From assembly GCA_053919585.1 (NCBI GenBank), contig CM132806.1: 64,000 bases of DNA. One strand, 5' to 3'. Below, piece after piece: positions 2,216 to 26,140 of this stretch (the first letter of the stretch is position 1; the number at the start of each line of letters is the position of its first letter). Source of the stretch: Euprymna scolopes (lineage: Eukaryota). The translations under genes were made by a program, and so were the position numbers. A model generated the notes under the pieces. That model saw only the letters and a program-made list of their open reading frames with translations. It made no database searches and was not told the DNA's origin.

Positions 2216-2429
2216 CGTGATTTTAGAGACAAAGTTTTTAAAAAATAGTAAGAACTCAACATTTTTAAATTTCGAAATTTTTTAGATGAGGATTGGTTAT
2301 TCGTAATATTTAACTTCTTCAGACTACTGTTCTCATTTGAAGTCTGATTTTCACAATATTTCGCTTGATGTAACCTCCGACCTTCTTCAGGTGTATCTTG
2401 TCGCATTCGAGAATGTTTCTGTCGTGATA

Positions 2430-2650
2430 TTGTAAACAAGCACAATGGAATTAAATGAACGACGTTATCATTATTATTGATTTATTTATTCATTTATTTA
2501 TTTATTTATTTTGCGAACTAGTCCACCGGGAAAATTGTTCCTTGTAATATATAATATTAAATAGAGGATTGATACATACGCAATTTGCATAGATTAAAAT
2601 ATCATGTTTAAGCGTATTGTACGACCGGGCAACGCCAGGCGTCCAGCTAG
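2430..2650 (+). mobile_element. Non-autonomous Helitron 3' fragment
   Basis: Ends in a GC hairpin ccgggcaacgccagg followed by CTAG|T. Homologous to 32594-32690(-) and 47330-47455(+). Confidence 0.65.
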
Positions 2651-3121
2651 TGTTATCTAAATTAGTAAATGCGAAAGCTTTTCCACCTATCTTATTCCAA
2701 TCATATTACTAGCAGGTCCCGTGTCCTGGCGTTGTCGTGGGTTATATAAATAAGTGATTTAAATATAAAAATAAATAATCTAGGCGGTTTAAATAGAATT
2801 TAACTTGTAAAATAAATAGCTCCTCCCTCCGCTCATGAAATGATATTGAATATCAATTGTTTTGACGCAAATAGGTTACAAACATATCTAAGAACATTTT
2901 TCGGCTTTATGCCAGTCTGGATCTACCACTTGACAGCACATTTATGCTCACCTCTAACGCCCAGTGTCTACCATCACTCACAGTCAATGATTTGTATCAC
3001 GTAACTCAAATTAACCAATCAATCGCCATTATTTATAAATAAAAAGAATCGTCTGAGTTCAATATTTAAAAATTAAAAGCTGGTTCTTATTTTTCCGCCT
3101 CTTGAATATTTGCCGACTACA

Positions 3122-3800
3122 ATAGTTCCCCCCACCCTGAAACAAGGAGGGTGGACCTGTAAAATCACCCTCGTCCGATCGTCTGTCTTAAATTTTCTCA
3201 ATAACAACGCCTTAGAATTTTTAAGAGAGCGGATTTTTCGGAAAAGCTCCGGTTGTCCCCTTCGGGGTCCCTTTCGGGTTAAAATAGCTAAAATTCACAC
3301 TTTTGAGTTTTTTAAAAGAAATAATTTGTATAAAACTTTCTGAAAAGTTGTAACTAACTGATTTCTATATAATTTTGTTTGTCTATACTTCGCGATAACT
3401 TTTGGGTGTGTCCCAGGGGATTTTTAGTGCTAATAAAGACACTCCATCTTCAGGACTATTTTACCATATTTGTCCAAAATTTTCTGTGTATGTCTATTTA
3501 TCAGTTTTGCATAGTTTTTAACTCAAATTTAAATATGTTAAAGCCGTAGGGATTTGAGGGGGGGCTAAATGTGGGAGGGGCAAATAATGGACTTAGTCAT
3601 TTCTTTTTTGCATAGTAAAGAACTCAACTTTACATATGTTAAGGCCTAAAACTGCACAGTTTGTTCATTTTCACCAGGATTTTACGTCCCCTGGGGACTT
3701 TTGTGACAAAATGGTGGGGAAAAATGCTGAACTTAGTCATTTTTCCCTCGTTCACTGTGCACTCACGGGGGATCATGCATCTTTCAGTTGTTGTTATTTT
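3122..3800 (+). mobile_element. Helentron-associated (HINE/DINE-1-like) non-autonomous element
   Basis: 5' hairpin ccaccct..agggtgg, then a gtccgatcgtctgtc microsatellite remnant, and a 3' gggggat complementary to the 5' tcccccc. Called on architecture only. Confidence 0.45.
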
Positions 3801-4282
3801 TACGCTTCATTTTTATGTTGATACTTTTCAAAATTGAATTAACTTACATGGTTTTCTCCAATCAAAAAACCTAAACTTTGTCATCAGTTTAAATATTTTG
3901 CTATATTTACGATTTCCACTTTTCTTCCGGTTGATCCTTTCATTTTAATTAATTTTGATGGTATATTTAGATTATTAAATTGTTAGGTAAAAGTACAGAG
4001 GAGGTAAAGGGACTCCCATGTCTACATTAAGAAAGTATTTTTTTTTAATAATAACGTTATTATTCAGAAAAAAAATAATTTTAACATGGGGAAGTTCAAC
4101 CGGAAGTGAAATGGAAACAGTAAGTGTAAAGATAAGAATGTTTGTCAGTTTATTTTTATTTTGCAAAATAGAATTAAAGTTAAAGTGTAGTATTTGTTCT
4201 GGATAAATTATGAAAGCGTATGCCTAAACAGAATAGGATAAAAAAAAATGTGTACAGACGATATAATGACTTTATAGTGTTA

Positions 4283-4698
4283 CTAGCATTTAAGCCCAGC
4301 GTTGCCCAGGTGTTTGGAGGTGTGTATTGTGCAAAATAACAAAAAAAGTGGTAGTAGGAAGGCAGGCTCGAACCCCTACCGCGAATGACTAAAAGAACGG
4401 GAAAAAACCTGACGTGTTTGCTGTTATGACCACCGCCAAAGCGGATGTGACATAGGTTTTAATTAAGGCTAGACAATCGAAAAGAGGGGATGACTTTCGA
4501 AAATATCGGTGAAAAAAGCGATCCTTTCCTTTAGAAAAGTGCCCAGTTGAGGGTGAACAAATTAATGTTTTTAGCCAATTTTTCGGTATTTGTCGTCTTA
4601 AGGGTCGAGCTTCAGAACGATACTGATCTTGTGAAAATTCGTCACCTCTATCGAAAGTTTTAGGTAGACATGCAAACATACCTACATACATTTATATA
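4283..4698 (-). mobile_element. Non-autonomous Helitron
   Basis: Minus-strand end cctgggcaacgctgggc..gCTAG|T. Reverse-complement homology to 49045-49573. Confidence 0.7.
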
Positions 4699-4699
4699 T

Positions 4700-5168
4700 T
4701 GGTAGCTTAAATTTTCGACCCAAACCGATTAAAAAGGTTGGCCCATCTCTGAATACACTTCATGTAAAATTTCAAATGTTTAGACCAGAGATTGTCTGAG
4801 TAATTTGGTAGAGACCGCAGAGGTCAAAATTTTTTTAACTTTGACCCCCTATTATGGCCCCTTAAAATTTATTGTTTTGGGCTCAATGTCCAAGCAACCT
4901 ATATCTAAAATTTAAATTGTTTATGCCCAAAATTGTCGGAGGAGTTTGGTAGAGTTCTCAAAGGTCAAATCGTTGAACTTTGACTTCTTAACAGCCAAAT
5001 TTCTGGCCGAAATCGGATTACAAAGATGTATCCAAATCTCAGTACTCTGTATATCAAATTTCGAATCTGTAGACTTTAAATTGACAGAGTTATTGCGTAG
5101 GGAAATGTACACAGACAGACACACAGACACACACAGTCAGACAAACAGACACTGTCACTTTTATAGAT
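4700..5168 (-). mobile_element. Non-autonomous Helitron, 5' part, with internal sub-repeats
   Basis: Reverse-complement homology to 33895-34400 (tgtacatttccctac, aaagttcaacgatttgacctttga). Confidence 0.65.
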
Positions 5169-5189
5169 ATATAGATGTGTATATATATG

Positions 5190-5225
<36 letters not shown>

Positions 5226-5254
5226 CGTGTGTGTGTGTGTGATGAGAATAATAG

Positions 5255-6310
5255 AAATAGTATTCTGACGAAATAGACAAATAAAAAAGGCAAGAAACTA
5301 AGTTATGTGTTCATCTACGTTTCGTCTTTATTTCGAGACTTCCTCTGGATGAATGAAATTTAGAAAAGAAAACACCAGTACAAATATTTGAAAAAAAAAC
5401 TTATCATTGAATTTTTTTCATAAATATTTGTACTTGTGTTTTGTTTTTTAATTTCACTAATCCAGGGGAAGTCTGGAAATAATGAGAAAATACTGCAANN
5501 NNNNNNNNNNNNNNNNNNNNNNNNNNNNNNNNNNNNNNNNNNNNNNNNNNNNNNNNNNNNNNNNNNNNNNNNNNNNNNNNNNNNNNNNNNNNNNNNNNNN
5601 NNNNNNNNNNNNNNNNNNNNNNNNNNNNNNNNNNNNAAACATATTTAATCTGAAAAGGAAACACGAGATAAATGGATAGTCCTTAATCCGCGGAGCTTCG
5701 AAGAAATACTTTCCTTCTCATCAGAGGGTAGGAATTAGCAAGATGTGGGATCGGATTTTGCATGCAGAAGTATTTGATGAAACAACAAGTAAGTAAAAGA
5801 TCTTACTTGAAAACAAAAAAAGTGAAGCAGAGGGAATATGGTAAAGAAAAAGGTTATTACACACGAATGGATAGTCTGGTAGAAGATCAAAAATCCAGTG
5901 ACGGTAAAATCCAAATGTAAAACTTCAAGAAAGTTAAAAGAATTTCCATTTGTACAAGTAAAATCCAAGGAAATCCTTAATTGGAAGAAGATAGTCCATA
6001 ATAATCCAAAGGCAGAAATCCATGGAATAATTCACAAAAATGTGTACAGGGAAAAAAAAAGATTCCAATAATATTAATAAAAGAAAAATAAGATGTGCTT
6101 TTCACTCTACTTCCGAGACATAAATATAAATAATAAAAATCTGGGAAGAGAAAGAAAAAAAAATGATGATAAAGTTAAATATAAAATATAAAATAAAGGA
6201 AAACAAAAGTCAAAATGACCCAGACAGGAAATGTTAAAGGCGCGAAAAAATATATAGGGCAAAATAATATAGGTCAACTGAAATGTACAGCTCCAAAAGC
6301 TCAAAGAACC
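5255..6310 (-). mobile_element. Penelope-like terminal/UTR remnant with two degenerate hammerhead motifs
   Basis: Minus 5679-5730 reads CTGATGA-GAAGGAA-agta-TTTCTTC-GAAG-c-TCCGCGGA. Minus 5308-5352 reads cagagga-a-GTCT..AGAC-GAAA-cgtag. The same terminus occurs at 36238-36283, 39315-39390 and 55030-55100. Confidence 0.5.
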
Positions 6311-6874
6311 TGTTTATGTGTGCTGTATATACATATATATCTAATAAACGAATATATCATAACACAGTAGAACGCGGATGATGGCAATCCCCTCCTCCTT
6401 TTAACTCGATCTTAGACTGATTTGTATCCGGCTACCAAACTATAAAGACATACAAAAGAATTTTGCTTCCTGCAGGTGCAAAAACAACTAATAACAATTT
6501 TATCGATGAAATTGTGTTCTTTGCCGACAAAATAGATATATAACTGTTATGGGGTACAAATCACCCCCATTTGAGAACTAAGTAGAATCAACCAGTCCTA
6601 TGAATACCACGGGTTCAGGAGATTAGATGGAGACATTCGGACCATGTTTAAACGCATGTTGTGAATTCTTTCCAGGCATTTTTCTAATTTGCTACAAATT
6701 TGAAAAAGTCGTACCCACTTGACCACTCGTTGGTCATTTAAGGGCTTTTCTTGTTTGGCTATAGGGACCGACCCCTTCTTTGGGTGAGTGGTCCCTTAAG
6801 AATTGTTTTTGTTTACTTGTACCCAATTGGGGTTGTTGTTGTTTTTACTAATTGTTGTTTTCCATTTTTTGCAG

Positions 6875-9437
6875 ATAGTCCAGGGTCTGGACCCAACTTA
6901 AGCAGCCGGCAAGGCTAAGGGAAACCGACGTGCCTTTTTAGGCGAAGGTCCCCCTGGTTTCCAAATCGGCGCGTTGGGAAAGGGCACTGGGCCAACACTT
7001 AGGGGGCAGGCCTCTGCCTCTTCACCATGTGTGACGCCCCTGGTGTAGCGATCGTGAAGGGTTTGGGGGTTCCGCTCCGAAGGGTACCCCCAGTTCGAGA
7101 AGGGTAACCGGGGTCGCCGCCCCATCCGTGAGTTCGATCGGTGTGTGTTCGGAGGTCGCCATCCAAGGTTCAGTTGCGGTCGGAAGGGTGACAGCCGCAG
7201 GGGTTGCCGCCCCAAAGGGCAACACCATTTCGAAGTCGAGATTGGTTTCGAGGGATGCCACCCCAAAAGGCACCACCAAGGCGGATACGGTCACGGTTCC
7301 GGGAATCGCCACCCCAGTGGTTCGAGCGAGTGTCCTGGCAATACAGAGAGAGTGACTGCGGTGGAAGCAACGCCAGAGCTAACGGCGGAACCCTTCTCAT
7401 TTGCAAGTATAGGAGTGACACCCTGGAAGACGCCGACAACAGTGGTGGCCACAACCAAGGAGTAGATAGTCGAGGCATGGAAACAGTTGCTGGAAACCAC
7501 TCCGAACGCCGAGAGCATTGAGGAAGATTATAGAATGACAAGAAAAATGAAAAGCAGACCGGTCAAACGTTGGTGGGCCCGCAACGAGTAAGAAGCTGCG
7601 TCAACACCGCCACCAACGCAGACGCAATCTGAAACGAGTAGCCCCCATAAACCGTAAGAAGCGGGACTGAGGAAAACGAAATCCCTTGAAGTAATTGTTG
7701 TGAATGGGTGCTCCCCGGGAGTGGGGGATCAATGGAAGTGACGCCAGTCAGTGCGGTCGATTGGCCAGCCCTCACAACGAGTGACTCATCCCCAATACCA
7801 CCGGGGAAAAAGCCGAAAAGTGAAAGCCAGCCAGCAGCCGACACGCCCAAAGAACCTGAAAAGACTGCTACAACGTGGGGCCTCAAGGAAGGTCAGATAA
7901 ATATCCTGGAATACTATCGAGACCTCTTCAATAACAAATTCCAGGGCTACGTGGAGGGAAACACCCTAAAAGTGTTGCCAGGGAGACTGGAGGATATACA
8001 GCTGAGATCGGTTTCCCTGGTAACCCTTGAAGTAAAAGGAAGGGGTCTCACCGGGGTCCCCAAAGAGAAGATGTTGGAGGTACTGGTCGAATTGAAGGTC
8101 CCCGCCCAGTATATAGTCCGGCGCAGTTATGCCATGTCGGATCTCCTTTTGCCAACAAATAGGAAGCGGAAAGAATAGCAAAAGGGGATCTCACATCGAA
8201 GAATTAAGGATGAAACCGGAGTACCAATCGAAACGGAGAACTACGGTCACGGTGATAGGCGTGCTGTGTTTCATAGATGGGGACTAGCTGGGAGCCACGA
8301 TGTCCCAGTTTGGTGAGGTAGAGGGGATACAGCCAGTGATGGGGCCCCGAAATAAACGAACAGGCGACTATAAGATCCCTATGAGAGTGAATAGGAAGGG
8401 ATTCAATGAGATCTTTTCCCAGCTGACATGCGAGGGCTGGCAGATGCTGGTAATAGTCGAGGGGAGAAGGCCGTATTGCTGGCATTGCCACAAACCGGGG
8501 CATGTATCAAAATTCTGCACCCAGAAGAAAGCGCCTGAGAAGGAAGAAGATATAAGAAAGCCAGCGGAGGAAATAGAGGAGAAAAAAGAGACTGAAAAAT
8601 GCGAAGCCGTTACCTGGAGCCAGGTTGCCTCGAAAAAGGCAAAAAGACAGGAAGGGCTGGCTCCCCAGGCAACACCGAGAGGAGCGACAGTGACGGCCAA
8701 GCGGAAACTCCGTGTGAGCTCCTCCGAGTCTGAAAGAAGGGAGGAAAGGGGCAAGACCAAACAGGCAGGAAAAAGGGAACGGAAAGAACACCAAGACGAA
8801 GAAGCTGAGCCTCCAACCCAGACCCCCCACGAGGAAGCTCAGCCCACCCCTCCCCAATTCAACACCCCGAGATAAAGGAGCAAGGTGAAGCTCCGGTTAC
8901 AGAAGCCGCAGCGATAGAAGCAGAGCTGGCAGAGAAGAAGCAAGACAAGCAAGAGAGGAAAAATCAAGAAAGTTTCCCTTTCTGGCCGAGGGAACGCCTC
9001 TGTAAAGTGACGGCAGAAGATACGACCGGCGACCTCAACGGAAGACAAAAGAAGTTCCTGAGGAACCTCGTCAACCTCTCAAAGGTTGACGGGAAGGAGG
9101 TCGCCGATCCCCGGAACTTCAGTGATGTTCCACAGCTCATTACATTCGTGAGACCAAATAGGGGAGGAAGGCTGGAAAAATGACCTTCAAGGGATTGCGT
9201 ATAATTGACGGGGAGCACCCATCTCTTGGGCAAATTGCCCAAAAATGTAGAGGGGGGGTCCCTATTTACGTTCACCCATCCTTTTATAGGGCATTAAAAG
9301 TGACGTTCCCCTTGGACGTCAGAGGCCTGGAACAAGACGGACGGCTTACGTCCGACCTGCTCACGGGCAGTATTGGTCAGACCTTCGACGGACTTACTCC
9401 CGAAGATTTTAGACACATCTGTGACGAATACTACTAG
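6875..9437 (+). pseudogene. LINE ORF1 (nucleic-acid chaperone) with CCHC zinc knuckle, fragmented
   Basis: ORF pieces 7128-7465, 7708-8178, 8300-8875 (CWHCHKPGHVSKFC = CX2CX4HX4C) and 9180-9437. The start is uncertain. Confidence 0.8.
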
Positions 9438-9447
9438 TTAGGGAATA

Positions 9448-12060
9448 ATGGCCACGGGCTTGAATCTAGCTAGTTTTAATGCGAGAAGCATGAGATCCCG
9501 AAGCAAGGCTTCTCGCGTGCTGAGGGATCTCCTGGCCCTTGAGGTAGACGTAGCTGCATTGTAGGAGACCCACTTTGTTTGGGCCGGGGATTTCTGTATG
9601 CTGGTAAACGACTTTGACGTTTACTCAGCATATGGCAATCTCCGTAGCTGTGGGTTTTCTGTTCTAGTGAGTCGCACCCTGTCTGCGACGTTTACCGTTG
9701 TCCACACGGACGCTAGTGGAAGGTTGGTCGTGGTCGATGTTGCCGATAAAAGCGGCGAGTTCCGGATCGTGGCACCTAACGTCTGCAGCGAGAGGGTTTC
9801 CTTTTTTCGGCGGGTGGAGGTGTTTCTCTCTTCGGGTCCGGAGCAGGTAGTGTAAATGGGGGACTGGAATGCCATCCTGGACCCCAAATGAGATAAGGTC
9901 GAGGGGATAGAGGGTCGGAGAGGTGTGAAAGCAGCCTGTCTGACCTGATGGTCTCGTGTGATCTTGTCGAGAGATTCCGTCTGGATCACACAAGGAGGGA
10001 GGTGTGGACGTGGCAAAATCATATGGCCTCCCGTCCTACTTGGATAGTATTTTAGTTAGAAGAGGCGACATAGATTTCTTATCTTGTTCCACGTTCCACT
10101 GGCTAGGTCATTCGGACCACAAACTGGTTATAGTCCGTTTGAAGTTAAGTAATAGGCCTAGGTTGGCTGGCTACTGGAAGTTGAACGCCTCCTTGTTGGA
10201 GTTGGAAGACTTCTGGTAGCAGCTGACAACACTAATTCAGCGGGAGTTAGTGGGGGCGGTTACCGGGAGTAGCTGGTGGGTTAGACTTAAGGATATCATT
10301 AGGCACTTTTGCGTCCAATATAGCCAACGCCTCGCGTTAACTAGGGCTCGGACCAAAAGGCACTTAGAGGATAGGCTGACCCGGGCAGTGGCAGGAGAGG
10401 ATCCACTAGAGCTAGTGCTAGCTAAGGGGGACTTGGATCGCTGTGCTAGTAAGCGATATGCGGGTCAAGTAGTTAGATCTAGGTTAAAAAGAGTTTCCAA
10501 CGAAGCCGTAAACGTTGACGCTGTTAAGCGTGGGGCTGCCCTAAGACGCGGCTCGGACGGGTACATTGGGGAAGTGAAAAACCTGGAAGGGCACACTCTC
10601 GTATCGCCACGAGAGATTTGCAACGGGTTTTGAGAACATTTGGAGGAGCGCTTCACCCAACTATCCCGAGTCTGCGGCCAGGAGTTTGGCAGCTATTTAG
10701 CTGGCTCGGCCCGCCTTACTGCGGCCCTAGCGGCTAGCTGCGAGGGGATGGTTACGGAGCGTGAGATCATTACTGCGTTGAAGCAGGTTGGATATAACAA
10801 ATCTCCAGGACTCGATGGTCTGCCTTTCGAACTGTTCTTGAGGTTGTCGCCCATGTTTGTGCCCCTTCTGAAGGGCGTGTTTAACCACTGGTTTGCGCAG
10901 GGCTCGATCCCTGGGCAGGTTACCAAACGAGTGGTGACGCTTCTGAAGAAGGGAGAACGGCATGGTTGGCGGAATCTAGATGAGTATAGGCCCATCACTC
11001 TGCTAAACACGGAGTTAAAGATTTTGTGCCGAGTTCTTGCAAATCGACTGCAGGTTGTTATCGGTGACTTGGTCGAGCCGGATCAGAACTTCTGTGAAGG
11101 GTCGATCGATTTAAAACAACTTGCACTTGGTACGCACGATCATAGAGGGTTTAGAAGCCGACACATAAGCCGCGCTGATCAATTTAGATCAGTCCAAGGC
11201 GTTCGATAGGGTCGACCATGGTTTCTTGGAATCTGTTTTAGAGATCGCCGGCTTTGGTCCGGAATTCCACAAGTGGGTCTCTGTTCTGTATCGTGATCCC
11301 GCCGTAGTGGTGCAAGTAAATGGTAGGTTGTCGGAGCCCTTTGGGGTTTCTCGGTCGGTGCGCCAGGGTTGTCCGCTGCCGCCTCTGTTATATGTCCTGG
11401 CGTTGGAGCCGTTCCTTTTCAAATTAAGGGACGAGGCGACGAGACCAGTCCTGTGCGGCATAGCTCTACCTGGCGGCAAATTTGCCAGGGTGACCACGTA
11501 CGCTGATGATGTCACCGTTTTCGTTACGCAAGAAAGCGATATTAGAGCGGTGATGGAGGCGATCGCTGAGTATGAAGTTGTCACAGGGGCTGTAGTCAAG
11601 CAAGTCCACTGGCCTGCGGTTGGACGCCTGGACCGGGGTAAACTCGCTTCAAGGTGCGTTCGGCTGGACGGAAAGCCGGTTAAGATCCACGAAGTGTGAT
11701 TTGGGCCTGGACACCAGCTGGACAAGAATTGGTCGGAGGTACAGACGAAGGTCGAGTCGTCGGTAGGGACTTGGATTCAGAGGAAATTGTCCTTGAGGGG
11801 TCGTGTGGAGGCATGTGTTACTTATGTGTTTCGGCTGATTCTTTACCGCTTGTCTGTTCTTCCCCTGCCTGCAGACCACTGTAAGGCTTTAGAGCGCCTC
11901 CTGTGGAAGGGAGGAAAGCCGTATATCCGTAGACAGGTCTGTACGCAGAAACTTGGCGAGGGAGGCTTAGGAATGCCTGACCTGCAGAGCCATAAGCACG
12001 CCGAAAGATTGACGTTCCTGATTCGGACACATAAGCACGCCGAAAGATTGGCGTTCCTGA
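9448..12060 (+). pseudogene. LINE ORF2: AP endonuclease plus reverse transcriptase, disrupted
   Basis: ATG at 9448 (MATGLNLASFNAR). APE motifs ETH, GDWNAILD, SDHKLV and YWKLNASLL. RT motifs KSPGLDG, YRPITLLNTELKIL, SKAFDRVDH, RQGCPL, YADDVT and GGLGMPDL, typical of L1/Tx1. Confidence 0.93.
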
Positions 12061-12195
12061 GTTCGAACCCAGCAACACGAGCCATCTCTGGATCGATTAG
12101 CAAAGACCATTAACTGCGAGAAATAACGTTAAATTTAAACATTTTATTTTTAAATGTTCTTTACGTCAGTCACAGTGATCTAATCGTTATAGGAT

Positions 12196-12227
<32 letters not shown>

Positions 12228-12319
12228 ATCTGAGTTTATTATTTTCCAGAGGTAAATTAACCAATGAAGTTTAACGAGGTTAATACAAGAGTGCTCAATA
12301 CCGAAATAGGGCAGGGTAT

Positions 12320-12528
12320 GCTTTTTATTTTTTTTTTGCATAAGTAGTAATATGTTGCTACACAGTCATGAGCATGTTTCGATAAACTAATTGCGCGATA
12401 CAGCTTATACGAAAACAAAGGTTGCAAACTTAGCTATAGTATAAGCTGTATCGCCTGATGAGGTCTCTAGTTGCTAGCAACTAGTTGAACAAAACATGAA
12501 TATATTACTTACTGCTTAGGTAAAAACA

Positions 12529-12535
<7 letters not shown>
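12320..12535. repeat. Small fold-back element with a hammerhead-like core
   Basis: Perfect 16-bp inverted repeat (12395-12410 / 12439-12454), CTGATGA at 12455, perfect 18-bp palindrome at 12467-12484. The outer arms are also complementary. Confidence 0.65.
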
Positions 12536-12573
<38 letters not shown>

Positions 12574-12989
12574 ACAATCAACTACTGTTTATACAATGTT
12601 CACAATTCCTGCTAGTTCGAACACTTTAGATTATCTAATGTATTCGCACGAATTCGGCGTTTAATAGTTCTTAATTCTTTTCATTCCCGTGACAATTGTT
12701 TGATCGCCCTAAGGTAAATACTTAGCAAATGTAGCAAAAGGTGGCTTCATACCTGCATTTAAATCTCATGGCCGGCAAGAATTGTAACCTTCTACACTGA
12801 TGATTTCGTAAACATGAAACATTAGTGTTTGTAGGTGTAAAGAATAATCATTGTTTACTTATGTATACATATATATAATTATATTCTAAAAACGAACAAT
12901 TAAAATCACTTAAAAATAACAATAATAAGTTTTAAGAGATCTATTTTTCATTATGTTTTTTTATCAGCAAAAAAAAATATTGTCGCAAT

Positions 12990-13421
12990 TCTTATTGGTC
13001 CTGGACTGTCATCTAAGCTTAAATCTCTGTCCCATGGACGAAATGTTGCATCACTCAGCCTGTTTTACAAGTATTTTAATGGTGAATGCTCCGACGAAGC
13101 CCTTGAACCCCCTCGACATAAATACCCCCGACAAACCCGACAAGCAGCAAAGTTTAACCCCTACACAGTAGAGATCCCTAGATATAAGAAAGCCTTCTAC
13201 TCTAATAGTTCATTCCTTAGAACTGACAGACATTGGAATCCCCTTCCGGATTCCTGCTTCCCCAACTGTACTGATATGCAGAAGTAAAAATGTAATGTTA
13301 ACAGACATCTTGCTTCTACACTCCCTACATAGTATCCCTGCAACTTATGCCCCTGATAGTAGCCCTCTATATCAAAGTGACACTGTGCCATTTTGGGGGG
13401 TTAAAATGTAATTTTAAAAAA
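12990..13421 (+). mobile_element. CR1-like LINE 3' fragment
   Basis: Homologous to 60750-61170 (LSHGRNVASL..FNGECSDE..SFLRTDRHW), with 3'UTR and A-rich end. Confidence 0.85.
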
Positions 13422-13444
13422 CTACACCCTTATGTCCAAGTTGC

Positions 13445-16400
13445 GATATGCTTTGTTTGTGGTGGAAAATAGTGATATGCTTTGTTTGTGGTGGAAAAGA
13501 GTGATATGCTTTGTTTGTAGTGAAAAAGAGTGATATGCTTTGTTTGTAGTGGAAAAGAGTGATATGCTTTGTTTGTGGTGGAAAAGAGTGATATGCTTTG
13601 TTTGTGGTGGAAAAACGTGATATGCTTTGTTTGTGGTGGAAAAGAGTGATATGCTTTGTTTGTGGTGGAAAAGAGTAATATGCTTTGTTTGTGGTGGAAA
13701 AGAGTGATATATTTTGTTTGTGGTGGAAAAGAGTGATATGCTTTGTTTGTGGTGGAAAAGAGTGATATGCTTTGTTTGTGGTGGAAAAGAGTGATATGCT
13801 TTGTTTGTGGTGGAAAAGAGTGATATGCTTTGTTTGTGGTGGAAAATAGTGATATGCTTGTTTGTGGTGGAAAAGAGTGATATATTTTGTTTGTGGTGGA
13901 AAAGAGTGATATGCTTTGTTTGTGGTGGAAAAGAGTGATATGCTTTGTTTGTAGTGGAAAAGAGTGATATGCTTTGTTTGTGGTGGAAAAGAGTGATATG
14001 CTTTGTTTGTGGTGGAAAAGAGTGATATGCTTTGTTTGTGGTGGAAAAGAGTGATATATTTTGTTTGTGGTGGAAAAGAGTGATATGCTTTGTTTGTGGT
14101 GGAAAAGAGTGATATGCTTTGTTTGTAGTGGAAAAGAGTGATATGCTTTGTTTGTGGTGGAAGAGAGTGATATGCTTTGTTTGTAGTGAAAAAGAGTGAT
14201 ATGCTTTGTTTGTGGTGGAAAAAAGTGATATGCTTTGTTTGTGGTGGAAAATAGTGATATGCTTTGTTTGTGGTGGAAAATAGTGATATGCTTTGTTTGT
14301 GGTGGAAAAGAGTGATATGCTTTGTGTGTAGTGGAAAAGAGTGATATACTTTTTTTGTGGTGGAAAAGAGTGATATGCTTTGTTTGTGGTGGAAAAGAGT
14401 GATATGCTTGTTTGTGGTGGAAGAGAGTGATATGCTTTGTTTGTGGTGGAAAAGAGTGATATGCTTGTTTGTGGTGGAAAAGAGTGATATGCTTTGTTTG
14501 TGGTGGAAGAGAGTGATATGCTTTGTTTGTGGTGGAAGAGAGTGATATGCTTTGTTTGTAGTGAAAAAGAGTGATATGCTTTGTGTGTAGTGGAAAAGAG
14601 TGATATGCTTTAATTGTGGTGGAAAAGAGTTATATGCTTTGTTTGTGGTGGAAAATAGTGATATGCTTTGTTTGTGGTGGAAAATAGTGATATGCTTTGT
14701 TTGTGGTGGAAAAGAGTGATATGCTTTGTTTGTGGTGGAAAATAGTGATATGCTTAGTTTGTAGTGGAAAAGAGTTATATGCTTTGTTTGTGGTGGAAAA
14801 TAGTGATATGCTTTGTTTGTGGTGGAAAAGAGTGATATATTTTGTTTGTGGTGGAAAAGAGTGATATGCTTTGTTTGTGGTGGAAAAGAGTGATATGCTT
14901 TGTTTGTAGTGGAAAAGAGTGATATGCTTTGTTTGTGGTGGAAAAGAGTAATATGCTTTGTTTGTGGTGAAAAAGAGTGATATGCTTTGTTTGTAGTGGA
15001 AAATAGTGATATGCTTTGTTTGTGGTGGAAACTAGTGATATGCTTTGTTTGTGGTGGAAAAGAGTGATATGCTTTGTTTGTGGTGGAAAAGAGTGATATG
15101 CTTTGTTTGTGGTGGAAAAGAGTGATATGCTAAGTTTGTAGTGGAAAAGAGTTATATGCTTTGTTTGTGGTGGAAAATAGTGATATGCTTTGTTTGTGGT
15201 GGAAAATAGTGATATGCTTTGTTTGTGGTGGAAAAGAGTGATATGCTTTGTTTGTGGTGGAAAATAGTGATATGCTTAGTTTGTAGTGGAAAAGAGTTAT
15301 ATGCTTTGTTTGTGGTGGAAAAGAGTGATATGCTTTGTTTGTGGTGGAAAATAGTGATATGCTTTGTTTGTGGTGGAAAAGAGTGATATGCTTTGTTTGT
15401 GGTGGAAAAGAGTGATATGCTTTGTTTGTGGTGGAAAAGAGTGATATGCTTTGTTTGTGGTGGAAAAGAGTGATATGCTTTGTTTGTGGTGGAAAAGAGT
15501 GATATGCTTTGTTGTTGGTGGAAAAGAGTGATATGCTTAGTTTGTAGTGGAAAAGAGTTATATGCTTTGTTTGTGGTGGAAACTAGTGATATGCTTTGTT
15601 TGTAGTGGAAAATAGTGATATGCTTTGTTTGTGGTGGAAAAGAGTGATATGCTTTGTTTGTGGTGGAAAATAGTGATATGCTTTGTTTGTGGTGGAAAAG
15701 GGTGATATTCTTTGTTGGTGGTGGAAAAGAGTGATATGCTTTGTTGGTGGTGGAAAAGAGTGATATGCTTTGTTTGTGGTGGAAAAGAGTGATATGCTTT
15801 GTTTGTGGTGGAAAAGGGTGATATTCTTTGTTGGTGGTGGAAAAGAGTGATATGCTTTGTTTGTAGTGGAAAATAGTGATATGCTTTGTTTGTAGTGGAA
15901 AAGAGTGATATGCTTTGTTTGTAGTGGAAAAGAGTGATATGCTTTGTTTGTGGTGGAAAAGAGTGATATGCTTTGTTTGTGGTGGAAAAGAGTGATATGC
16001 TTTGTTTGTGGTGGAAAAGAGTGATATGCTTTGTTTGTGGTGGAAAAGAGTGATATTCTTTGTTAGTAATGGAAAAGAGTAATATGCTCTGTTTGTGGTG
16101 GAAAAGAGTGATATGCTTTGTGTGGAGTGGAAAAGAGTGATATACTTTTTTTGTGGTGGAAAAGAGTGATATGCTTTGTTTGTGGTGGAAAAGAGTGATA
16201 TGCTTGTTTGTGGTGGAAGAGAGTGATATGCTTTGTTTGTGGTGGAAAAGAGTGATATGCTTGTTTGTGGTGGAAAAGAGTGATATGCTTTGTTTGTGGT
16301 GGAAGAGAGTGATATGCTTTGTTTGTGGTGGAAGAGAGTGATATGCTTTGTTTGTAGTGAAAAAGAGTGATATGCTTTGTGTGTAGTGGAAAAGAGTGAT

Positions 16401-19400
16401 ATGCTTTGTTTGTGGTGGAAAAGAGTGATATGCTTTGTTTGTTTTGGAAAAGAGTGATATGCTTTGTTTGTGGTGGAAAATAGTGATATGCTTTGTTTGT
16501 GGTGGAAAAGAGTGATATATTTTGTTTGTGGTGGAAAAGAGTGATATGCTTTGTTTGTGGTGGAAAAGAGTGATATGCTTTGTTTGTAGTGGAAAAGAGT
16601 GATATGCTTTGTTTGTGGTGGAAACGAGTAATATGCTTTGTTTGTGGTGAAAAAGAGTGATATGCTTTGTTTGTAGTGGAAAAGAGTGATATGCTTTGTT
16701 TGTGGTGGAAAAGAGTGATATGCTTTGTTTGTGGTGGAAAAGAGTAATATGCTTTGTTTGTGGTGGAAAAGAGTGATATGCTTTGTTTGTGGTGGAAAAG
16801 AGTGATATGCTTAGTTTGTAGTGGAAAAGAGTTATATGCTTTGTTTGTGGTGGAAAATAGTGATATGCTTTGTTTGTGGTGGAAAATAGTGATATGCTTT
16901 GTTTGTGGTGGAAAAGAGTGATATGCTTTGTTTGGGTTGGAAAATAGTGATATGCTTAGTTTGTAGTGGAAAAGAGTTATATGCTTTGTTTGTGGTGGAA
17001 AATAGTGATATGCTTTGTTTGTGGTGGAAAAGAGTGATATATTTTGTTTGTGGTGGAAAAGAGTGATATGCTTTGTTTGTGGTGGAAAAGAGTGATATGC
17101 TTTGTTTGTAGTGGAAAAGAGTGATATGCGTTGTTTGTGGTGGAAAAGAGTAATATGCTTTGTTTGTGGTGAAAAAGAGTGATATGCTTTGTTTGTAGTG
17201 GAAAATAGTGATATGCTTTGTTTGTGGTGGAAACTAGTGATATGCTTTGTTTGTGGTGGAAAAGAGTGATATGCTTTGTTTGTGGTGGAAAAGAGTGATA
17301 TGCTTTGTTTGTGGTGGAAAAGAGTGATATGCTTAGTTTGTAGTGGAAAAGAGTTATATGCTTTGTTTGTGGTGGAAAATAGTGATATGCTTTGTTTGTG
17401 GTGGAAAATAGTGATATGCTTTGTTTGTGGTGAAAAAGAGTGGAAAAGAGTGATATGCTTTGTTTGTGGTGGAAAATAGTGATATGCTTAGTTTGTAGTG
17501 GAAAAGAGTTATATGCTTTGTTTGTGGTGGAAAATAGTGATATGCTTTGTTTGTGGTGGAAAATAGTGATATGCTTTGTTTGTGGTGGAAAAGAGTGATA
17601 TGCTTTGTTTGTGGTGGAAAAGAGTGATATGCTTTGTTTGTGGTGGAAAAGAGTGATATGCTTTGTTTGTGGTGGAAAAGAGTGATATGCTTTGTTTGTG
17701 GTGGAAAAGAGTGATATGCTTTGTTGTTGGTGGAAAAGAGTGATATGCTTAGTTTGTAGTGGAAAAGAGTTATATGCTTTGTTTGTGGTGGAAACTAGTG
17801 ATATGCTTTGTTTGTAGTGGAAAATAGTGATATGCTTTGTTTGTGGTGGAAAAGAGTGATATGCTTTGTTTGTGGTGGAAAATAGTGATATGCTTTGTTT
17901 GTGGTGGAAAAGGGTGATATTCTTTGTTGGTGGTGGAAAAGAGTGATATGCTTTGTTGGTGGTGGAAAAGAGTGATATGCTTTGTTTGTGGTGGAAAAGG
18001 GTGATATTCTTTGTTGGTGGTGGAAAAGAGTGATATGCTTTGTTTGTAGTGGAAAATAGTGATATGCTTTGTTTGTAGTGGAAAAGAGTGATATACTTTG
18101 TTTGTAGTGGAAAAGAGTGATATGCTTTGTTTGTGGTGGAAAAGAGTAATATATTTTGTTTGTGGTGGAAAAGAGTGATATGCTTTGTTTGTGGTGGAAA
18201 AGAGTGATATGCTTTGTTTGTGGTGGAAAAGAGTGATATTCTTTGTTAGTAATGGAAAAGAGTAATATGCTTTGTTTGTGGTGGAAAAGGGTGATATTCT
18301 TTGTTTGTAATGGAAAAGAGTGATATGCTTTGTTTGTGGTGGAAAAGAGTGATATGCTTTGTTTGTAGTGGAAAATAGTGATATGCTTTGTTTGTCGTGG
18401 AAAAGAGTGAAATGCTTTGTTTGTAGTGGAAGTAGTGATATGCTTTGTTTGTAGTGGAAAAGAGTGATATGCTTTGTTTGTGGTGGAAAAGAGTGATATG
18501 CTTTGTTTGTGGTGGAAAATAGTGATATGCTTTGTTTGTGGTGGAAAATAGTGATATGCTTTTTTTGTGGTGGAAGTAGTGATATGCTTTGTTTGTGGTG
18601 GAAAAGAGTGATATGCTTTGTTTGTGGTGGAAGTAGTGATATGCTTTGTTTGTGGTGGAAAAGAGTGATATGCTTTGTTTGTGGTGGAAAAGAGTGATAT
18701 GCTTTGTTTGTGGTGGAAGTAGTGATATGCTTTGTTTGTGGTGGAAAATAGTGATATGCTTTGTTTGTGGTGGAAGTAGTGATATGCTTTGTTTGTGGTG
18801 GAAAATAGTGATATGCTTTGTTTGTGGTGGAAGTAGTGATATGCTTTGTTTGTGGTGGAAAAGAGTGATATGCTTTGTTTGTGGTGGAAAAGAGTGATAT
18901 GCTTTGTTTGTGGTGGAAGTAGTGATATGCTTTGTTTGTGGTGGAAAATAGTGATATGCTTTGTTTGTGGTGGAAAATAGTGATATGCTTTGTTTGTGGT
19001 GGAAGTAGTGATATGCTTTGTTTGTGGTGGAAAAGAGTGATATGCTTTGTTTGTGGTGGAAAAGAGTGATATGCTTTGTTTGTGGTGGAAAAGAGTGATA
19101 TGCTTTGTTGTTGGTGGAAAAGAGTGATATGCTTAGTTTGTAGTGGAAAAGAGTTATATGCTTTGTTTGTGGTGGAAACTAGTGATATGCTTTGTTTGTA
19201 GTGGAAAATAGTGATATGCTTTGTTTGTGGTGGAAAAGAGTGATATGCTTTGTTTGTGGTGGAAAATAGTGATATGCTTTGTTTGTGGTGGAAAAGGGTG
19301 ATATTCTTTGTTGGTGGTGGAAAAGAGTGATATGCTTTGTTGGTGGTGGAAAAGAGTGATATGCTTTGTTTGTGGTGGAAAAGGGTGATATTCTTTGTTG

Positions 19401-22298
19401 GTGGTGGAAAAGAGTGATATGCTTTGTTTGTAGTGGAAAATAGTGATATGCTTTGTTTGTAGTGGAAAAGAGTGATATACTTTGTTTGTAGTGGAAAAGA
19501 GTGATATGCTTTGTTTGTGGTGGAAAAGAGTAATATATTTTGTTTGTGGTGGAAAAGAGTGATATGCTTTGTTTGTGGTGGAAAAGAGTGATATGCTTTG
19601 TTTGTGGTGGAAAAGAGTGATATTCTTTGTTAGTAATGGAAAAGAGTAATATGCTTTGTTTGTGGTGGAAAAGGGTGATATTCTTTGTTTGTAATGGAAA
19701 AGAGTGATATGCTTTGTTTGTGGTGGAAAAGAGTGATATGCTTTGTTTGTAGTGGAAAATAGTGATATGCTTTGTTTGTCGTGGAAAAGAGTGAAATGCT
19801 TTGTTTGTAGTGGAAGTAGTGATATGCTTTGTTTGTAGTGGAAAAGAGTGATATGCTTTGTTTGTGGTGGAAAAGAGTGATATGCTTTGTTTGTGGTGGA
19901 AAATAGTGATATGCTTTGTTTGTGGTGGAAAATAGTGATATGCTTTTTTTGTGGTGGAAGTAGTGATATGCTTTGTTTGTGGTGGAAAAGAGTGATATGC
20001 TTTGTTTGTGGTGGAAGTAGTGATATGCTTTGTTTGTGGTGGAAAAGAGTGATATGCTTTGTTTGTGGTGGAAAAGAGTGATATGCTTTGTTTGTGGTGG
20101 AAGTAGTGATATGCTTTGTTTGTGGTGGAAAATAGTGATATGCTTTGTTTGTGGTGGAAGTAGTGATATGCTTTGTTTGTGGTGGAAAATAGTGATATGC
20201 TTTGTTTGTGGTGGAAGTAGTGATATGCTTTGTTTGTGGTGGAAAAGAGTGATATGCTTTGTTTGTGGTGGAAAAGAGTGATATGCTTTGTTTGTGGTGG
20301 AAGTAGTGATATGCTTTGTTTGTCGTGGAAAAGAGTGAAATGCTTTGTTTGTAGTGGAAGTAGTGATATGCTTTGTTTGTAGTGGAAAAGAGTGATATGC
20401 TTTGTTTGTGGTGGAAAAGAGTGATATGCTTTGTTTGTGGTGGAAAATAGTGATATGCTTTGTTTGTGGTGGAAAATAGTGATATGCTTTTTTTGTGGTG
20501 GAAGTAGTGATATGCTTTGTTTGTGGTGGAAAAGAGTGATATGCTTTGTTTGTGGTGGAAGTAGTGATATGCTTTGTTTGTGGTGGAAAAGAGTGATATG
20601 CTTTGTTTGTGGTGGAAAAGAGTGATATGCTTTGTTTGTGGTGGAAGTAGTGATATGCTTTGTTTGTGGTGGAAAATAGTGATATGCTTTGTTTGTGGTG
20701 GAAGTAGTGATATGCTTTGTTTGTGGTGGAAAATAGTGATATGCTTTGTTTGTGGTGGAAGTAGTGATATGCTTTGTTTGTGGTGGAAAAGAGTGATATG
20801 CTTTGTTTGTGGTGGAAAAGAGTGATATGCTTTGTTTGTGGTGGAAGTAGTGATATGCTTTGTTTGTGGTGGAAAATAGTGATATGCTTTGTTTGTGGTG
20901 GAAAATAGTGATATGCTTTGTTTGTGGTGGAAGTAGTGATATGCTTTGTTTGTGGTGGAAAAGAGTGATATGCTTTGTTTGTGGTGGAAAAGAGTGATAT
21001 GCTTTGTTTGTGGTGGAAGTAGTGATATGCTTTGTTTGTAGTGGAAAATAGTGATATGCTTTGTTTGTAGTGGAAAAGAGTGATATGCTTTGTTTGTAGT
21101 GGAAAAGAGTGATATGCTTTGTTTGTAGTGGAAAAGAGTGATATGCTTTGTTTGTGGTGGAAAAGAGTGATATGCTTTGTTTGTGGTGGAAAAGAGTGAT
21201 ATGCTTTGTTTGTGGCGGAAAAGAGTGATATGCTTTGTTTGTAGTGGAAAATAGTGATATGCTTTGTTTGTAGTGGAAAAGAGTGATATGCTTTGTTTGT
21301 GGTGGAAAAGAGTGATATGCTTTGTTTGTGGTGGAAAAGAGTGATATGCTTTGTTTGTAGTGGAAAATAGTGATATGCTTTGTTTGTGATGGAAAATAGT
21401 GATATGCTTTGTTTGTGGTGGAAAAGAGTGATATGCTTTGTTTGTAGTGGAAAAGAGTGATATGCTTTGTTTGTGGTGGAAAATAGTGATATGCTTTGTT
21501 TGTGGTGGAAAATAGTGATATGCTTTGTTTGTGGTGGAAAAGAGTGATATGCTTTGTTTGTAGTGGCAAAGAGTGATATGCTTTGTTTGTGGTGGAAAAT
21601 AGTGATATGCTTTGTTTGTGGTGGAAAAGAGTGATATGCTTTGTTTGTGGTGGAAAAGAGTGATATGCTTTGTTTGTAGTGGAAAAGAGTGATATGCTTT
21701 GTTTGTGGTGGAAAAGAGTGATATGCTTTGTTTGTGGTGGAAGTAGTGATATGCTTTGTTTGTAGTGGAAAATAGTGATATGCTTTGTTTGTAGTGGAAA
21801 AGAGTGATATGCTTTGTTTGTAGTGGAAAATAGTGATATGCTTTGTTTGTAGTGGAAAAGAGTGATATGCTTTGTTTGTAGTGGAAAATAGTGATATGCT
21901 TTGTTTGTGGTGGAAAAGGGTGATATTCTTTGTTTGTAATGGAAAAGAGTGATATGCTTTGTTTGTAGTGGAAAATAGTGATATGCTTTGTTTGTGGTGG
22001 AAAAGGGTGATATTCTTTGTTTGTAGTGGAAAAGAGTGATATGCTTTGTTTGTAGTGGAAAATAGTGATATGCTTTGTTTGTAGTGGAAAAGAGTGATAT
22101 GCTTTGTTTGTAGTGGAAAAGAGTGATATGCTTTGTTTGTAGTGGAAAATAGTGATATGCTTTGTTTGCGGTGGAAAAGAGTGATATGCTTTGTTTGTAG
22201 TGGAAAATAGTGATATGCTTTGTTTGTGGTGGAAAAGGGTGATATTCTTTGTTTGTAATGGAAAAGAGTAATATGCTTTGTTTGCGGTGGAAAAGAGT
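13445..22298 (+). repeat. Tandem array of a 29-bp unit, about 305 copies (GATATGCTTTGTTTGTGGTGGAAAAGAGT)
   Basis: Period 29 read directly from the sequence. Variants include AAAATAGT, GTAGTGG and a 28-bp GGAAGTAGT form. Duplicated multi-monomer blocks are present. Confidence 0.99.
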
Positions 22299-22684
22299 GA
22301 CATAAAAAAACCGAACGCATCTTTAGAAAAGCGGATTTTGTCCCTCCATCGTTTGTGTGCATGTCGTTTTAAGGAAATATTGATATTTGTATCGGCATCA
22401 TTATTTTCATTGGTATTCTAGGCAACGGAATCAATCTAAACATGTTCGATGTCGATCTGCATCTAATCTGATCGATATTTCAATCAGTCGAATAAAAATA
22501 GACGATTACAAACAAATTGAATGGTCGTTTGAATAATACATGTGAATGCATATGTCTAGACTAACAACATCTTTAACATTAATAGAAAAGTAGAATAAGC
22601 AGATCATATGGTCAACCGAACTTTGGAACGTTGATGGCAAAACTCCGTTATTATTTTATATATATATATATATATATAATCAAT

Positions 22685-23050
22685 TTTAATTACAAAGAAG
22701 GCATACTACCACTTTGAAGTAGGAGGCTACTATCGGGGATATAAGTTGCAGAGGCATTATGTGGGGAGTTGAGTAGCAAGATGTTTGTGCACATTACACT
22801 TGAGCTTCTGCGTGTCACTACAGTTTGGAAGGAAGTTCCAAAGTTTAGCAGTTCTAGAGTATAAACGCTTGGAGTATAAGGTTTTCTTACACATAGGGAT
22901 CTCTACTGTGAAGGTATGGGACTTAGTTGCTTGTCGGGGATAGTCACATCGAGCGAGTACAAGTGCTTGTAGTTCGTCAGAGCATTCACCATTAAAGTAC
23001 TTGTAGAACAGGCAGAGAGATGCAACATTTCGTCGTATGTGTGACGAAAC
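22685..23050 (-). mobile_element. CR1-like LINE 3' fragment
   Basis: ORF 22757-23128 contains SHIRRNVASLCLFYKYFNGECSDELQALV..RTAKLWNFLP; the 3'UTR follows. Confidence 0.88.
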
Positions 23051-25719: not shown

Positions 25720-26140
25720 GAAATTTCATCGGTCCCACTTTATCAACTTAGCTCCAGCCCCTGTCCCATCGTCGCAATGTTGCATCACTGTGTCTGTTTT
25801 ACAAATATTTTAATGGGTTGTTTTGATGATTTCGTTGCACTTGTACCCGCTCGACATACATATCCCCGACAAACCAGCTTAGCAACAAAATCTCACTCCT
25901 TCACTGTTAATGTCCTTAAATGCCAGAAAGCTTTCTATTCTAATAGTTTCTTTCCTCGAACAGCTAGACTTGGAATTCCTTTCCTGCTGCATGCTTCCCT
26001 GGCTGTACTGATATGCAGTTTAAATGTAAGATAAACAAATATCTTGTTAATATTTCCTGGATATGGTCCCAAATAGTAGCGCCTTACGTCCAAGTGGCTA
26101 TATGCCTTGTAAAGCGGTGAACATGAGTAATTTTTTTTAA
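25720..26140 (+). mobile_element. CR1-like LINE 3' fragment, the variant closest to the 29-bp satellite
   Basis: LQPLSHRRNVASLCLFYKY and YSNSFFPRTARL. The 3' end reads gccttacgtccaagtggctatatgccttgtaaagcggtgaacatgagtaat. Confidence 0.88.

What the first reader, a model, noticed from the sequence alone, without database searches (positions are those of the whole stretch)
13422..22310. 8.9-kb satellite is a ~305-fold reiteration of the last 29 nt of a CR1-like LINE, with telomerase-like terminal redundancy
Seen: the array is preceded by cccttatgtccaagttgc and followed by GACAT-AAAAAAA. Lead-in plus one unit (cccttatgtccaagttgcgatatgctttgtttgtggtggaaaagagtgat) aligns at roughly three-quarters identity, by eye, with the 3' terminus of the CR1-like copy at 26081-26131 (gccttacgtccaagtggctatatgccttgtaaagcggtgaacatgagtaat). 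The last unit has gCggtgg like that LINE. Collapsed to one unit, the locus is a short 5'-truncated LINE end: 3'UTR-GATAT-(24 nt)-GACAT-polyA. The unit is thus bounded by a GAYAT redundancy, and only the copy next to the A-tail reads GACAT. It starts directly after the A-tail of another CR1-like copy that ends at 13421. Known: CR1/L2 LINEs end in short tandem repeats attributed to template slippage during target-primed reverse transcription, and telomerase re-aligns via a terminally redundant template. Inference: the LINE RT may have re-copied a 29-nt template window (cDNA end ATATC re-annealing to GACAU), seeding a G/T-rich strand-asymmetric array that was later enlarged at the DNA level. Post-insertion replication slippage on the same microhomology is the alternative.
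Basis: partly seen in the sequence, partly recalled or inferred. Interest (0 to 1): 0.85.

Follow-up and report, generated by a model that had tools for sequence, protein, structure and literature searches.

The report
Satellite grown from a LINE tail
An 8.9-kb block of about 306 tandem 29-base repeats in a cephalopod genome really is the amplified last 29 bases of a very short, dead LINE copy, but it looks like ordinary DNA-level satellite growth, a known way for satellites to arise, and not telomerase-like copying by the element's enzyme.

Summary
A 29-bp array of 306 units lies at 13445-22300. An 18-nt lead-in precedes it, and GACAT plus seven A follow it. Lead-in plus one unit is homologous to the 3' end of a LINE family with four clear copies and one distant tail elsewhere in the window. 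A profile built without the array finds it at E=1.8e-6.

The telomerase-like reading is not supported:
- All 13 other tails I could read carry one unit.
- No GAYAT redundancy is conserved in the family.
- The array holds large internal block duplications: 1,317 bp and 715 bp exact, and 45 identical units in a row against at most 9 after shuffling unit order. Only DNA-level exchange produces that.
- Public-run contigs show the LINE tail and the lead-in in three related species, tandem units in two, and none in the third.

Most likely a 5'-truncated LINE tail landed in the A-tail of an older copy. Its last 29 nt then duplicated across a 5-nt imperfect microhomology and expanded by slippage and unequal exchange. 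How the first duplication arose stays open. Satellites from LINE 3' ends are already described. Other notes of this scan report satellites born from LINE fragments elsewhere in this genome, but not this 29-mer.

The parts
12980..13421 (+). LINE copy A: a 5'-truncated 3' fragment (end of ORF2 plus 3' UTR) with its own single terminal unit and an A6 tail
   Evidence: Self-BLAST gives 78% identity to copy C over 446 nt and 73% to copies B and D. Sequence read. The tail aligns with the family.
13422..13426 (+). ctaca: five bases between copy A's A-run and the lead-in. They may be filler or the first bases of the truncated insert.
   Evidence: Only a weak match to the family's gtagc at that position.
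13427..13444 (+). Lead-in: 18 nt of LINE 3' UTR just upstream of the terminal unit. It is closest to the tails of copy B and L001b.
   Evidence: Alignment; nhmmer hit 13427-13469 at E=1.8e-6. Positions 13428-13459 have high word depth in all four runs, with no variant above 5% except one contig.
13445..22300 (+). 29-bp tandem array: 306 units plus the first 2 nt of a 307th
   Evidence: TRF, wrap-around parse, unit statistics.
17623..18939 (+). First copy of a 1,317-bp block repeated exactly at 19007-20323 (offset 1,384 nt, 48 units)
   Evidence: 45 identical units in a row against at most 9 in 200 shuffles of unit order.
19007..20323 (+). Second copy of the 1,317-bp block
18376..19090 (+). First copy of a 715-bp block repeated exactly at 20304-21018. 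The corresponding unit run also recurs from 19764 (19 identical units).
18409..21747 (+). Sub-domain holding every 28-nt variant unit (one A lost, GT for AG). In most of it these alternate with standard units every 2-3 units.
   Evidence: Unit table. Counts per ninth of the array are 0,0,0,0,0,8,7,9,1.
22299..22310 (+). GACAT plus A7: the end of the LINE tail. It matches TGAATAAAA... in other copies.
13415..13422 (+). Candidate left target-site duplication, TAAAAAAC. Its partner is TAAAAAAAC at 22303-22311. It is low complexity and not decisive.
25743..26131 (+). LINE copy B, with a single-unit tail
60382..61165 (+). LINE copy C: a 210-aa open C-terminal ORF2 piece plus a 3' UTR with a single-unit tail
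22680..23034 (-). LINE copy D, with a single-unit tail running into (TA)n

Best explanation
A very short 5'-truncated copy of a LINE inserted into, or right after, the A-tail of an older copy of the same family. It carried about 18 nt of 3' UTR, the terminal ~29 nt and the A-run. At this one locus the terminal 29 nt then duplicated in tandem between two imperfect 5-nt microhomologies: GATAT at its start and GACAT at the LINE end. Once two or more units existed, replication slippage and unequal sister-chromatid or homologous exchange enlarged the array to about 306 units. The most recent steps copied whole blocks of 19 to 48 units.

Shown: the homology to the LINE tail, the anatomy, and the block duplications.

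Suggested: the restricted species distribution.

Inferred: the order of events, and that the first duplication was made by DNA replication or repair and not by the LINE reverse transcriptase.
For: Anatomy and homology.

DNA-level growth:
- 1,317-bp and 715-bp exact internal repeats at offsets of 48 and 67 units.
- 45 identical units in a row against at most 9 after shuffling unit order.
- Variant units are clustered in domains.

No sign of a family-wide RT property:
- 13 of 13 other tails are single-unit.
- Loose-end consensus at 13388/13389 runs ...TTGTTTGGGGTGAAAATG.AATAAAAAAAA in 79, 40, 33 and 14 contigs of four runs.
- No GAYAT-type redundancy is conserved in the family alignment.

Species distribution:
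- Tandem units are present in organisms A and B. Organism C has zero depth beyond 13507, although LINE-tail and lead-in depth is high in all three.
- Organism C's run is not among the holders of array words.

Abundance: summed word depth over the units is only a few hundred to about a thousand times single-copy depth in X1. That fits one or a few arrays, not a dispersed family (rough).

Precedent: satellites derived from LINE 3' ends are described (PMC9659126).

Lead only, unchecked: other notes of this scan report satellites grown from internal LINE pieces in this genome. If true, LINE-derived satellites there are not tied to RT initiation sites.
Against: The mechanism of the very first duplication leaves no distinguishing scar. 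Internal junctions reading GATAT with only the last reading GACAT is expected from both DNA slippage and RT re-alignment.

The sample of tails is small (13) and covers several subfamilies. I could not retrieve copies of the abundant subfamily that shares the exact lead-in, so I could not count units there.

Organism C shows one contig (depth 22.3, with two small deletions). Depth there runs to about 13499 and so crosses a unit junction, which may mark a short proto-array.

The exact 1.3-kb blocks could partly be an assembly effect.
Confidence: 0.72

Rival explanations
1. During target-primed reverse transcription the LINE RT re-aligned its cDNA end (ATATC) on GACAU near the RNA 3' end and re-copied the 29-nt window several times. 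This seeded the array, which DNA-level processes later enlarged.
For: The unit is exactly the terminal segment before the A-run and sits in a severely truncated copy. Only the last junction reads GACAT. Template slippage on short 3' repeats is accepted for some LINEs (PMC3747384).
Against: 0 of 13 other tails have more than one unit. The redundancy is not conserved in the family. A related species with an abundant LINE tail and lead-in has no array. The unit's second half is not part of the abundant lead-in family: depth drops about ten-fold at 13460 in the array-free species. Known slippage units are 3-8 nt and vary in number among all copies.
Confidence: 0.1
2. The array's length or internal structure is an assembly artefact, for example a shorter array inflated by mis-joined reads.
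For: Perfectly identical 1.3-kb and 0.7-kb blocks inside a 29-bp array are what a mis-assembly could also produce. No long reads were available to me.
Against: Independent runs of two species contain tandem units at hundreds of times single-copy depth, and one contig bridges the 5' junction. The variant domains are orderly.
Confidence: 0.08
3. The array, or a short version of it, already existed in the 3' UTR of a source element and arrived by retrotransposition, so it was born elsewhere.
For: Word depth over the units is somewhat higher than 306 units would give (rough). Other arrays may therefore exist.
Against: No multi-unit tail was seen among 13 copies. Searching a 200-aa piece of the array's stop-free minus-strand reading frame found no similar product in the protein collection. 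The block structure shows local growth.
Confidence: 0.06

Closest known systems
Satellite DNAs derived from the 3' end of LINEs: common cetacean satellite from the L1 3' UTR, chicken HinfI/SCR1 from the CR1 3' UTR plus ORF2, Drosophila 18HT from the HeT-A 3' region (review PMC9659126)
   Same: A tandem array whose monomer is a piece of a non-LTR retrotransposon's 3' region, grown at the DNA level.
   Different: The monomer here is only 29 bp and is exactly the terminal segment. The parent copy's lead-in and A-run are still attached at both ends. It appears low-copy and restricted to two of the three related species sampled.
Short 3' tail repeats of LINEs and SINEs attributed to template slippage: UnaL2 (TGTAA)n, I factor (TAA)n, the CR1 octamer, and 'slippage retrotransposition' of an Aedes SINE (PMC3747384, PMC4316615)
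   Same: A repeat located at the very 3' end of a LINE-type element.
   Different: Those units are 3-8 nt, occur in essentially all copies in variable number, and lie at the extreme end. This unit is 29 nt, is tandem at one locus only among the copies seen, and is followed by CAT plus an A-run.
Microsatellite seeding by CR1 LINE tails in snakes (PMC3157835)
   Same: A LINE tail supplies the seed of a tandem repeat that then expands.
   Different: There, a simple repeat already present in every tail is dispersed to thousands of loci. Here, a non-repetitive 29-nt tail segment became repetitive at one locus.
Telomerase template re-alignment
   Same: Only the formal picture: a repeat unit bounded by a short redundancy.
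   Different: The redundancy is not conserved in the template family. No chromosome-end context is seen, and there is no evidence that an RT added the units.

Membership tests
TE-derived satellite DNA (LINE 3'-end derived) | Long head-to-tail array of near-identical monomers | tested here: met
   306 units, 92% matches; parse.
TE-derived satellite DNA (LINE 3'-end derived) | Monomer homologous to a segment of a transposable element | tested here: met
   A profile built without the array hits 13427-13469 at E=1.8e-6. 0 of 5,000 shuffles reach the observed score.
TE-derived satellite DNA (LINE 3'-end derived) | Growth by DNA-level exchange (higher-order or block structure) | tested here: met
   1,317-bp and 715-bp exact blocks; 45-unit run against at most 9 in shuffles.
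TE-derived satellite DNA (LINE 3'-end derived) | High genomic abundance or several arrays | tested here: inconclusive
   Word depth over the units is about 500-1,000 times single-copy depth in X1. The tool warns that this is not a copy number.
LINE tail repeats made by RT template slippage | Repeat present in variable number at the 3' end of most copies of the family | tested here: not met
   13 of 13 other tails are single-unit. Loose-end consensus goes from one unit into the A-run.
LINE tail repeats made by RT template slippage | Short unit (3-8 nt) forming the extreme 3' end | tested here: not met
   The unit is 29 nt. The array is followed by CAT and A7.
Telomerase-like reiterative templating | Template with a conserved terminal redundancy used for re-alignment | tested here: not met
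   The family alignment shows no conserved GAYAT pair. In the array copy the match is 4 of 5 nt.
Telomerase-like reiterative templating | RT-dependent addition of units | not testable with these tools
   Needs a TPRT or template-jumping assay.
CR1-clade LINE | ORF2 with APE-type endonuclease and RT | tested here: inconclusive
   Relatives of the 210-aa C-terminal piece carry RVT_1. Contigs L003 and L006 have neighbouring Exo_endo_phos_2 plus RVT_1 ORFs. I did not show that these belong to the same element.
CR1-clade LINE | 3' UTR hairpin plus short microsatellite and no poly(A) (PMC4316615) | tested here: not met
   Tails end in A-runs or T-then-A runs. The consensus fold is only -1.3 kcal/mol.
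CR1-clade LINE | Placement in the CR1 clade by RT phylogeny | not tested
   No reference RT set was available in the tools.

The most novel reading that the evidence does not exclude
The RT of this LINE can occasionally jump back on a 4-5 nt microhomology near the RNA 3' end and re-copy a 29-nt window. This would create minisatellite seeds at insertion time, a long-unit version of tail slippage that could be a general source of LINE-tail minisatellites.
Probability: 0.08. Interest if true: 0.7.

Novelty: new member of a known kind. Interest (0 to 1): 0.27.

Why it matters
This is a clean, readable case of satellite birth. Both edges of the parent LINE tail are still attached, the unit boundaries can be mapped to the base, and related species appear to differ in whether they have the array. 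That makes it useful as a worked example and for dating satellite turnover in large cephalopod genomes. It does not open a new mechanism. The stop-free minus strand of the array gives spurious ORFs of up to 1,049 aa, which is a hazard for gene annotation.

Tried and rejected
- Protein search with a 200-aa piece of the array's stop-free minus-strand reading frame, meant to find other arrays in public assemblies: no hit.
- Two exact-pattern scans of JGI metagenome contigs, one for the lead-in junction and one for the unit junction: nothing. This is uninformative, because cephalopod DNA is unlikely to be there.
- Look-up of this scan's notes by sequence: blank.
- Three of ten contig look-ups returned no DNA. 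L006 and L007 held no tail of this family.
- Target-site duplication: only A-runs match, TAAAAAA(C). This decides neither for an independent nested insertion nor for a single composite insertion with copy A.
- Consensus RNA fold of the tails: weak, -1.3 kcal/mol, 3 of 10 pairs with compensatory changes. I make no claim of a recognition hairpin.
- Rfam scan of the window at gathering scores: no match.
- Pfam on the window's other long ORFs: only a Tc1/mariner transposase fragment.
- Read laying allowed one call, and I spent it on the 5' junction. The 3' junction and the array length remain unchecked by reads.

Full report
**1. What is there**

Tandem Repeats Finder reports a single array at 13445-22300 with period 29, 306.1 copies and 92% matches. 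A wrap-around alignment to the consensus unit resolves 306 full units plus the first two bases of a 307th. Of these, 96 are exact consensus, 47 are distinct types, and mean divergence from consensus is 4.3%. The + strand is 71.5% G+T and only 3.5% C.

Reading across the locus:
- A6 run of LINE copy A, 13416-13421
- ctaca, 13422-13426
- 18-nt lead-in, 13427-13444
- the array
- GACAT, 22299-22303
- A7, 22304-22310

GACAT occurs nowhere else in the array. It also occurs in unit 302.

**2. Is the unit a LINE tail?**

Yes. Self-comparison finds four clear copies of one LINE family in the window:
- A, 12980-13421, +
- B, 25743-26131, +
- C, 60382-61165, +
- D, 23034-22680, -

Copy C keeps a 210-aa open C-terminal ORF2 piece. 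Its relatives in public assemblies carry RVT_1. Five contigs that encode its closest relatives (L001-L005) gave seven more tails, and the window holds one more distant tail at 212-253.

In the multiple alignment, lead-in plus one unit runs collinear with the family's last ~50 nt. The unit corresponds to the segment between the conserved AGTGGC motif and the terminal (G)AAT-A-run. The figures are:
- Identity to the family majority consensus is 67% over 63 columns. The family's own mean pairwise identity is 64%.
- No shuffle out of 5,000 reaches the observed score, z=9.3.
- A profile built without the array finds 13427-13469 at E=1.8e-6.

The lead-in (ccttatgtccaagttgc) differs from copy A's own tail at the same position. 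So the array-bearing piece is a separate, extremely 5'-truncated insertion and not a duplication of copy A's end.

**3. How did the array grow?**

The unit table shows long runs of identical unit order at fixed offsets:
- 45 units at offset 48
- 24 at offset 67
- 19 at offset 19
- 15 at offset 76

At base level, 17623-18939 equals 19007-20323 exactly (1,317 bp), and 18376-19090 equals 20304-21018 exactly (715 bp). Shuffling unit order gives runs of at most 9. All 28-nt variant units lie between 18409 and 21747, where through most of the stretch they alternate with standard units every two or three units.

Re-copying a 29-nt RNA window cannot produce multi-unit blocks. Unequal exchange or replication-based duplication can.

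**4. Was the seed made by the reverse transcriptase?**

(a) Other copies. All 13 other tails carry one unit. In Logan contigs of four DNA runs, the best-supported loose ends after 13388/13389 have the consensus ...TTGTTTGGGGTGAAAATG.AATAAAAAAAA. They come from 79, 40, 33 and 14 contigs, and show one unit going straight into the A-run.

(b) The redundancy. The family alignment has no conserved repeat of the unit's first five bases before the A-run. GATAT and GACAT are this copy's versions of the family's C(A/T)NT(G/A) and GAAT. The match is 4 of 5 bases. That is the sort of microhomology any tandem duplication uses, and it is weakly significant at best.

(c) Species distribution:
- The LINE tail (13300-13379) and the lead-in with the unit's first 15 nt (13428-13459) have very high summed word depth in organisms A, B and C.
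- Almost no variant letters appear in the lead-in, so an abundant subfamily with that lead-in exists in all three.
- In array-free organism C, depth falls from about 2,700 to about 200 at 13460. That subfamily's tail therefore differs from the unit's second half.
- Tandem units have depth of about 5,000-15,000 in X1, 1,100-6,200 in X6 and 500-1,000 in X5 (organism B, which also has a 'goes back 58' joint). In organism C depth is zero beyond 13507.
- Organism C's run is absent from the holders of array words.

(d) Abundance. Contigs listed for X1 have depths of about 12-25, and the junction-bridging one has 14.8. The unit depth therefore corresponds to hundreds to perhaps a couple of thousand units. 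Part of that comes from ordinary LINE tails laid on unit 3 (joints 13369>13505 and similar). This suggests one or a few arrays, not a dispersed multi-locus family. The tool warns that depth is not a copy number, so this is only an order of magnitude.

None of this excludes an RT-made first duplication at this single insertion. Nothing supports it either, and the pattern 'internal junctions T, last junction C' follows from both models.

**5. Support for the locus itself**

One X1 contig of single-copy depth (record 8, 95 nt, 3 mismatches and 1 gap) spans 13374-13469. It covers copy A's tail, the A-run, ctaca, the lead-in and most of unit 1. The 3' junction, the total length and the exact blocks were not checked by reads. 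The only candidate target duplication is an A-run, TAAAAAA(C) at 13415-13422 and 22303-22311. That fits insertion into copy A's A-tail but is not decisive.

**6. Comparison with what is known**

- Satellites derived from LINE 3' regions are documented: the cetacean common satellite from the L1 3' UTR, chicken HinfI from the CR1 3' UTR plus ORF2, and 18HT from HeT-A (PMC9659126).
- Template slippage is proposed for short tail repeats such as UnaL2 (TGTAA)n and I (TAA)n (PMC3747384).
- CR1 tails carry a hairpin and an octamer repeat (PMC4316615).
- CR1 tails seed microsatellites on a large scale in a snake (PMC3157835).

This locus belongs with the first group. It fails the defining features of the slippage group: repeats in most copies, and short units.

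The 'CR1-like' label is unproven. Tails here end in A-runs or T-then-A runs, the consensus fold is weak at -1.3 kcal/mol, and no RT phylogeny was done.

Unchecked notes of this scan describe satellites grown from internal LINE pieces elsewhere in this genome, which they call a 5.9-Gb cephalopod genome. If correct, in-place amplification of LINE fragments is not tied to LINE 3' ends. None of those notes concerns this 29-mer.

**7. Verdict**

This is a new, tidy member of a known kind: a LINE-tail-derived satellite expanded at the DNA level. Interest is low to moderate. The RT-seeding idea remains possible at about 8%, and a genome-wide unit count would decide it.

Noticed in passing
window 19154-22303 (-), 19630-22362 (-), 19179-21569 (-): The minus strand of the consensus unit has no stop codon in any frame, so the array yields mechanical ORFs of 1,049, 910 and 796 aa. 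These are a likely source of spurious repeat proteins in automatic annotation.
   Followed up: partly
window 13460-13499, organism C run X8: In the species without the array, depth of about 20-33 runs to about 13499, across a unit junction. One contig of depth 22.3 there carries a 2-nt and a 1-nt deletion. It may be a short, diverged proto-array or the orthologous seed state.
   Followed up: no
window 13735-14604: Several runs guessed to be RNA from organism A hold 21-29% of the array's sampled words, so the array may be transcribed. The run type is only guessed, and I could not lay the reads.
   Followed up: no
window 38092-38712 (-): A 206-aa ORF with a Tc3-type transposase HTH domain (PF01498, E=2e-21): a fragment of a Tc1/mariner transposon.
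   Followed up: partly
window 30211-59427: More than 25 (AT)n/(TA)n microsatellites of 40-130 bp, many perfect, recur every 0.3-1.6 kb through the second half of the window. Nine N runs of about 130-175 nt lie across the window (first at 5499-5636), seven of them in this second half.
   Followed up: no
window 26120-26139; L005 3335-3352: Some tails of the LINE family end in a T-run followed by a few A (T8-9 then AAA) and not in an A-run. Copies A and C have TTT(T) before the A-run. The family's terminus therefore seems to be AAT(T)n(A)n and not a plain poly(A).
   Followed up: partly
window 212-253 (+); L003 196-237 (-): Two more distant tails of the same general type, from a related LINE or SINE family (nhmmer E=0.45 and 0.001). 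Both are single-unit.
   Followed up: partly
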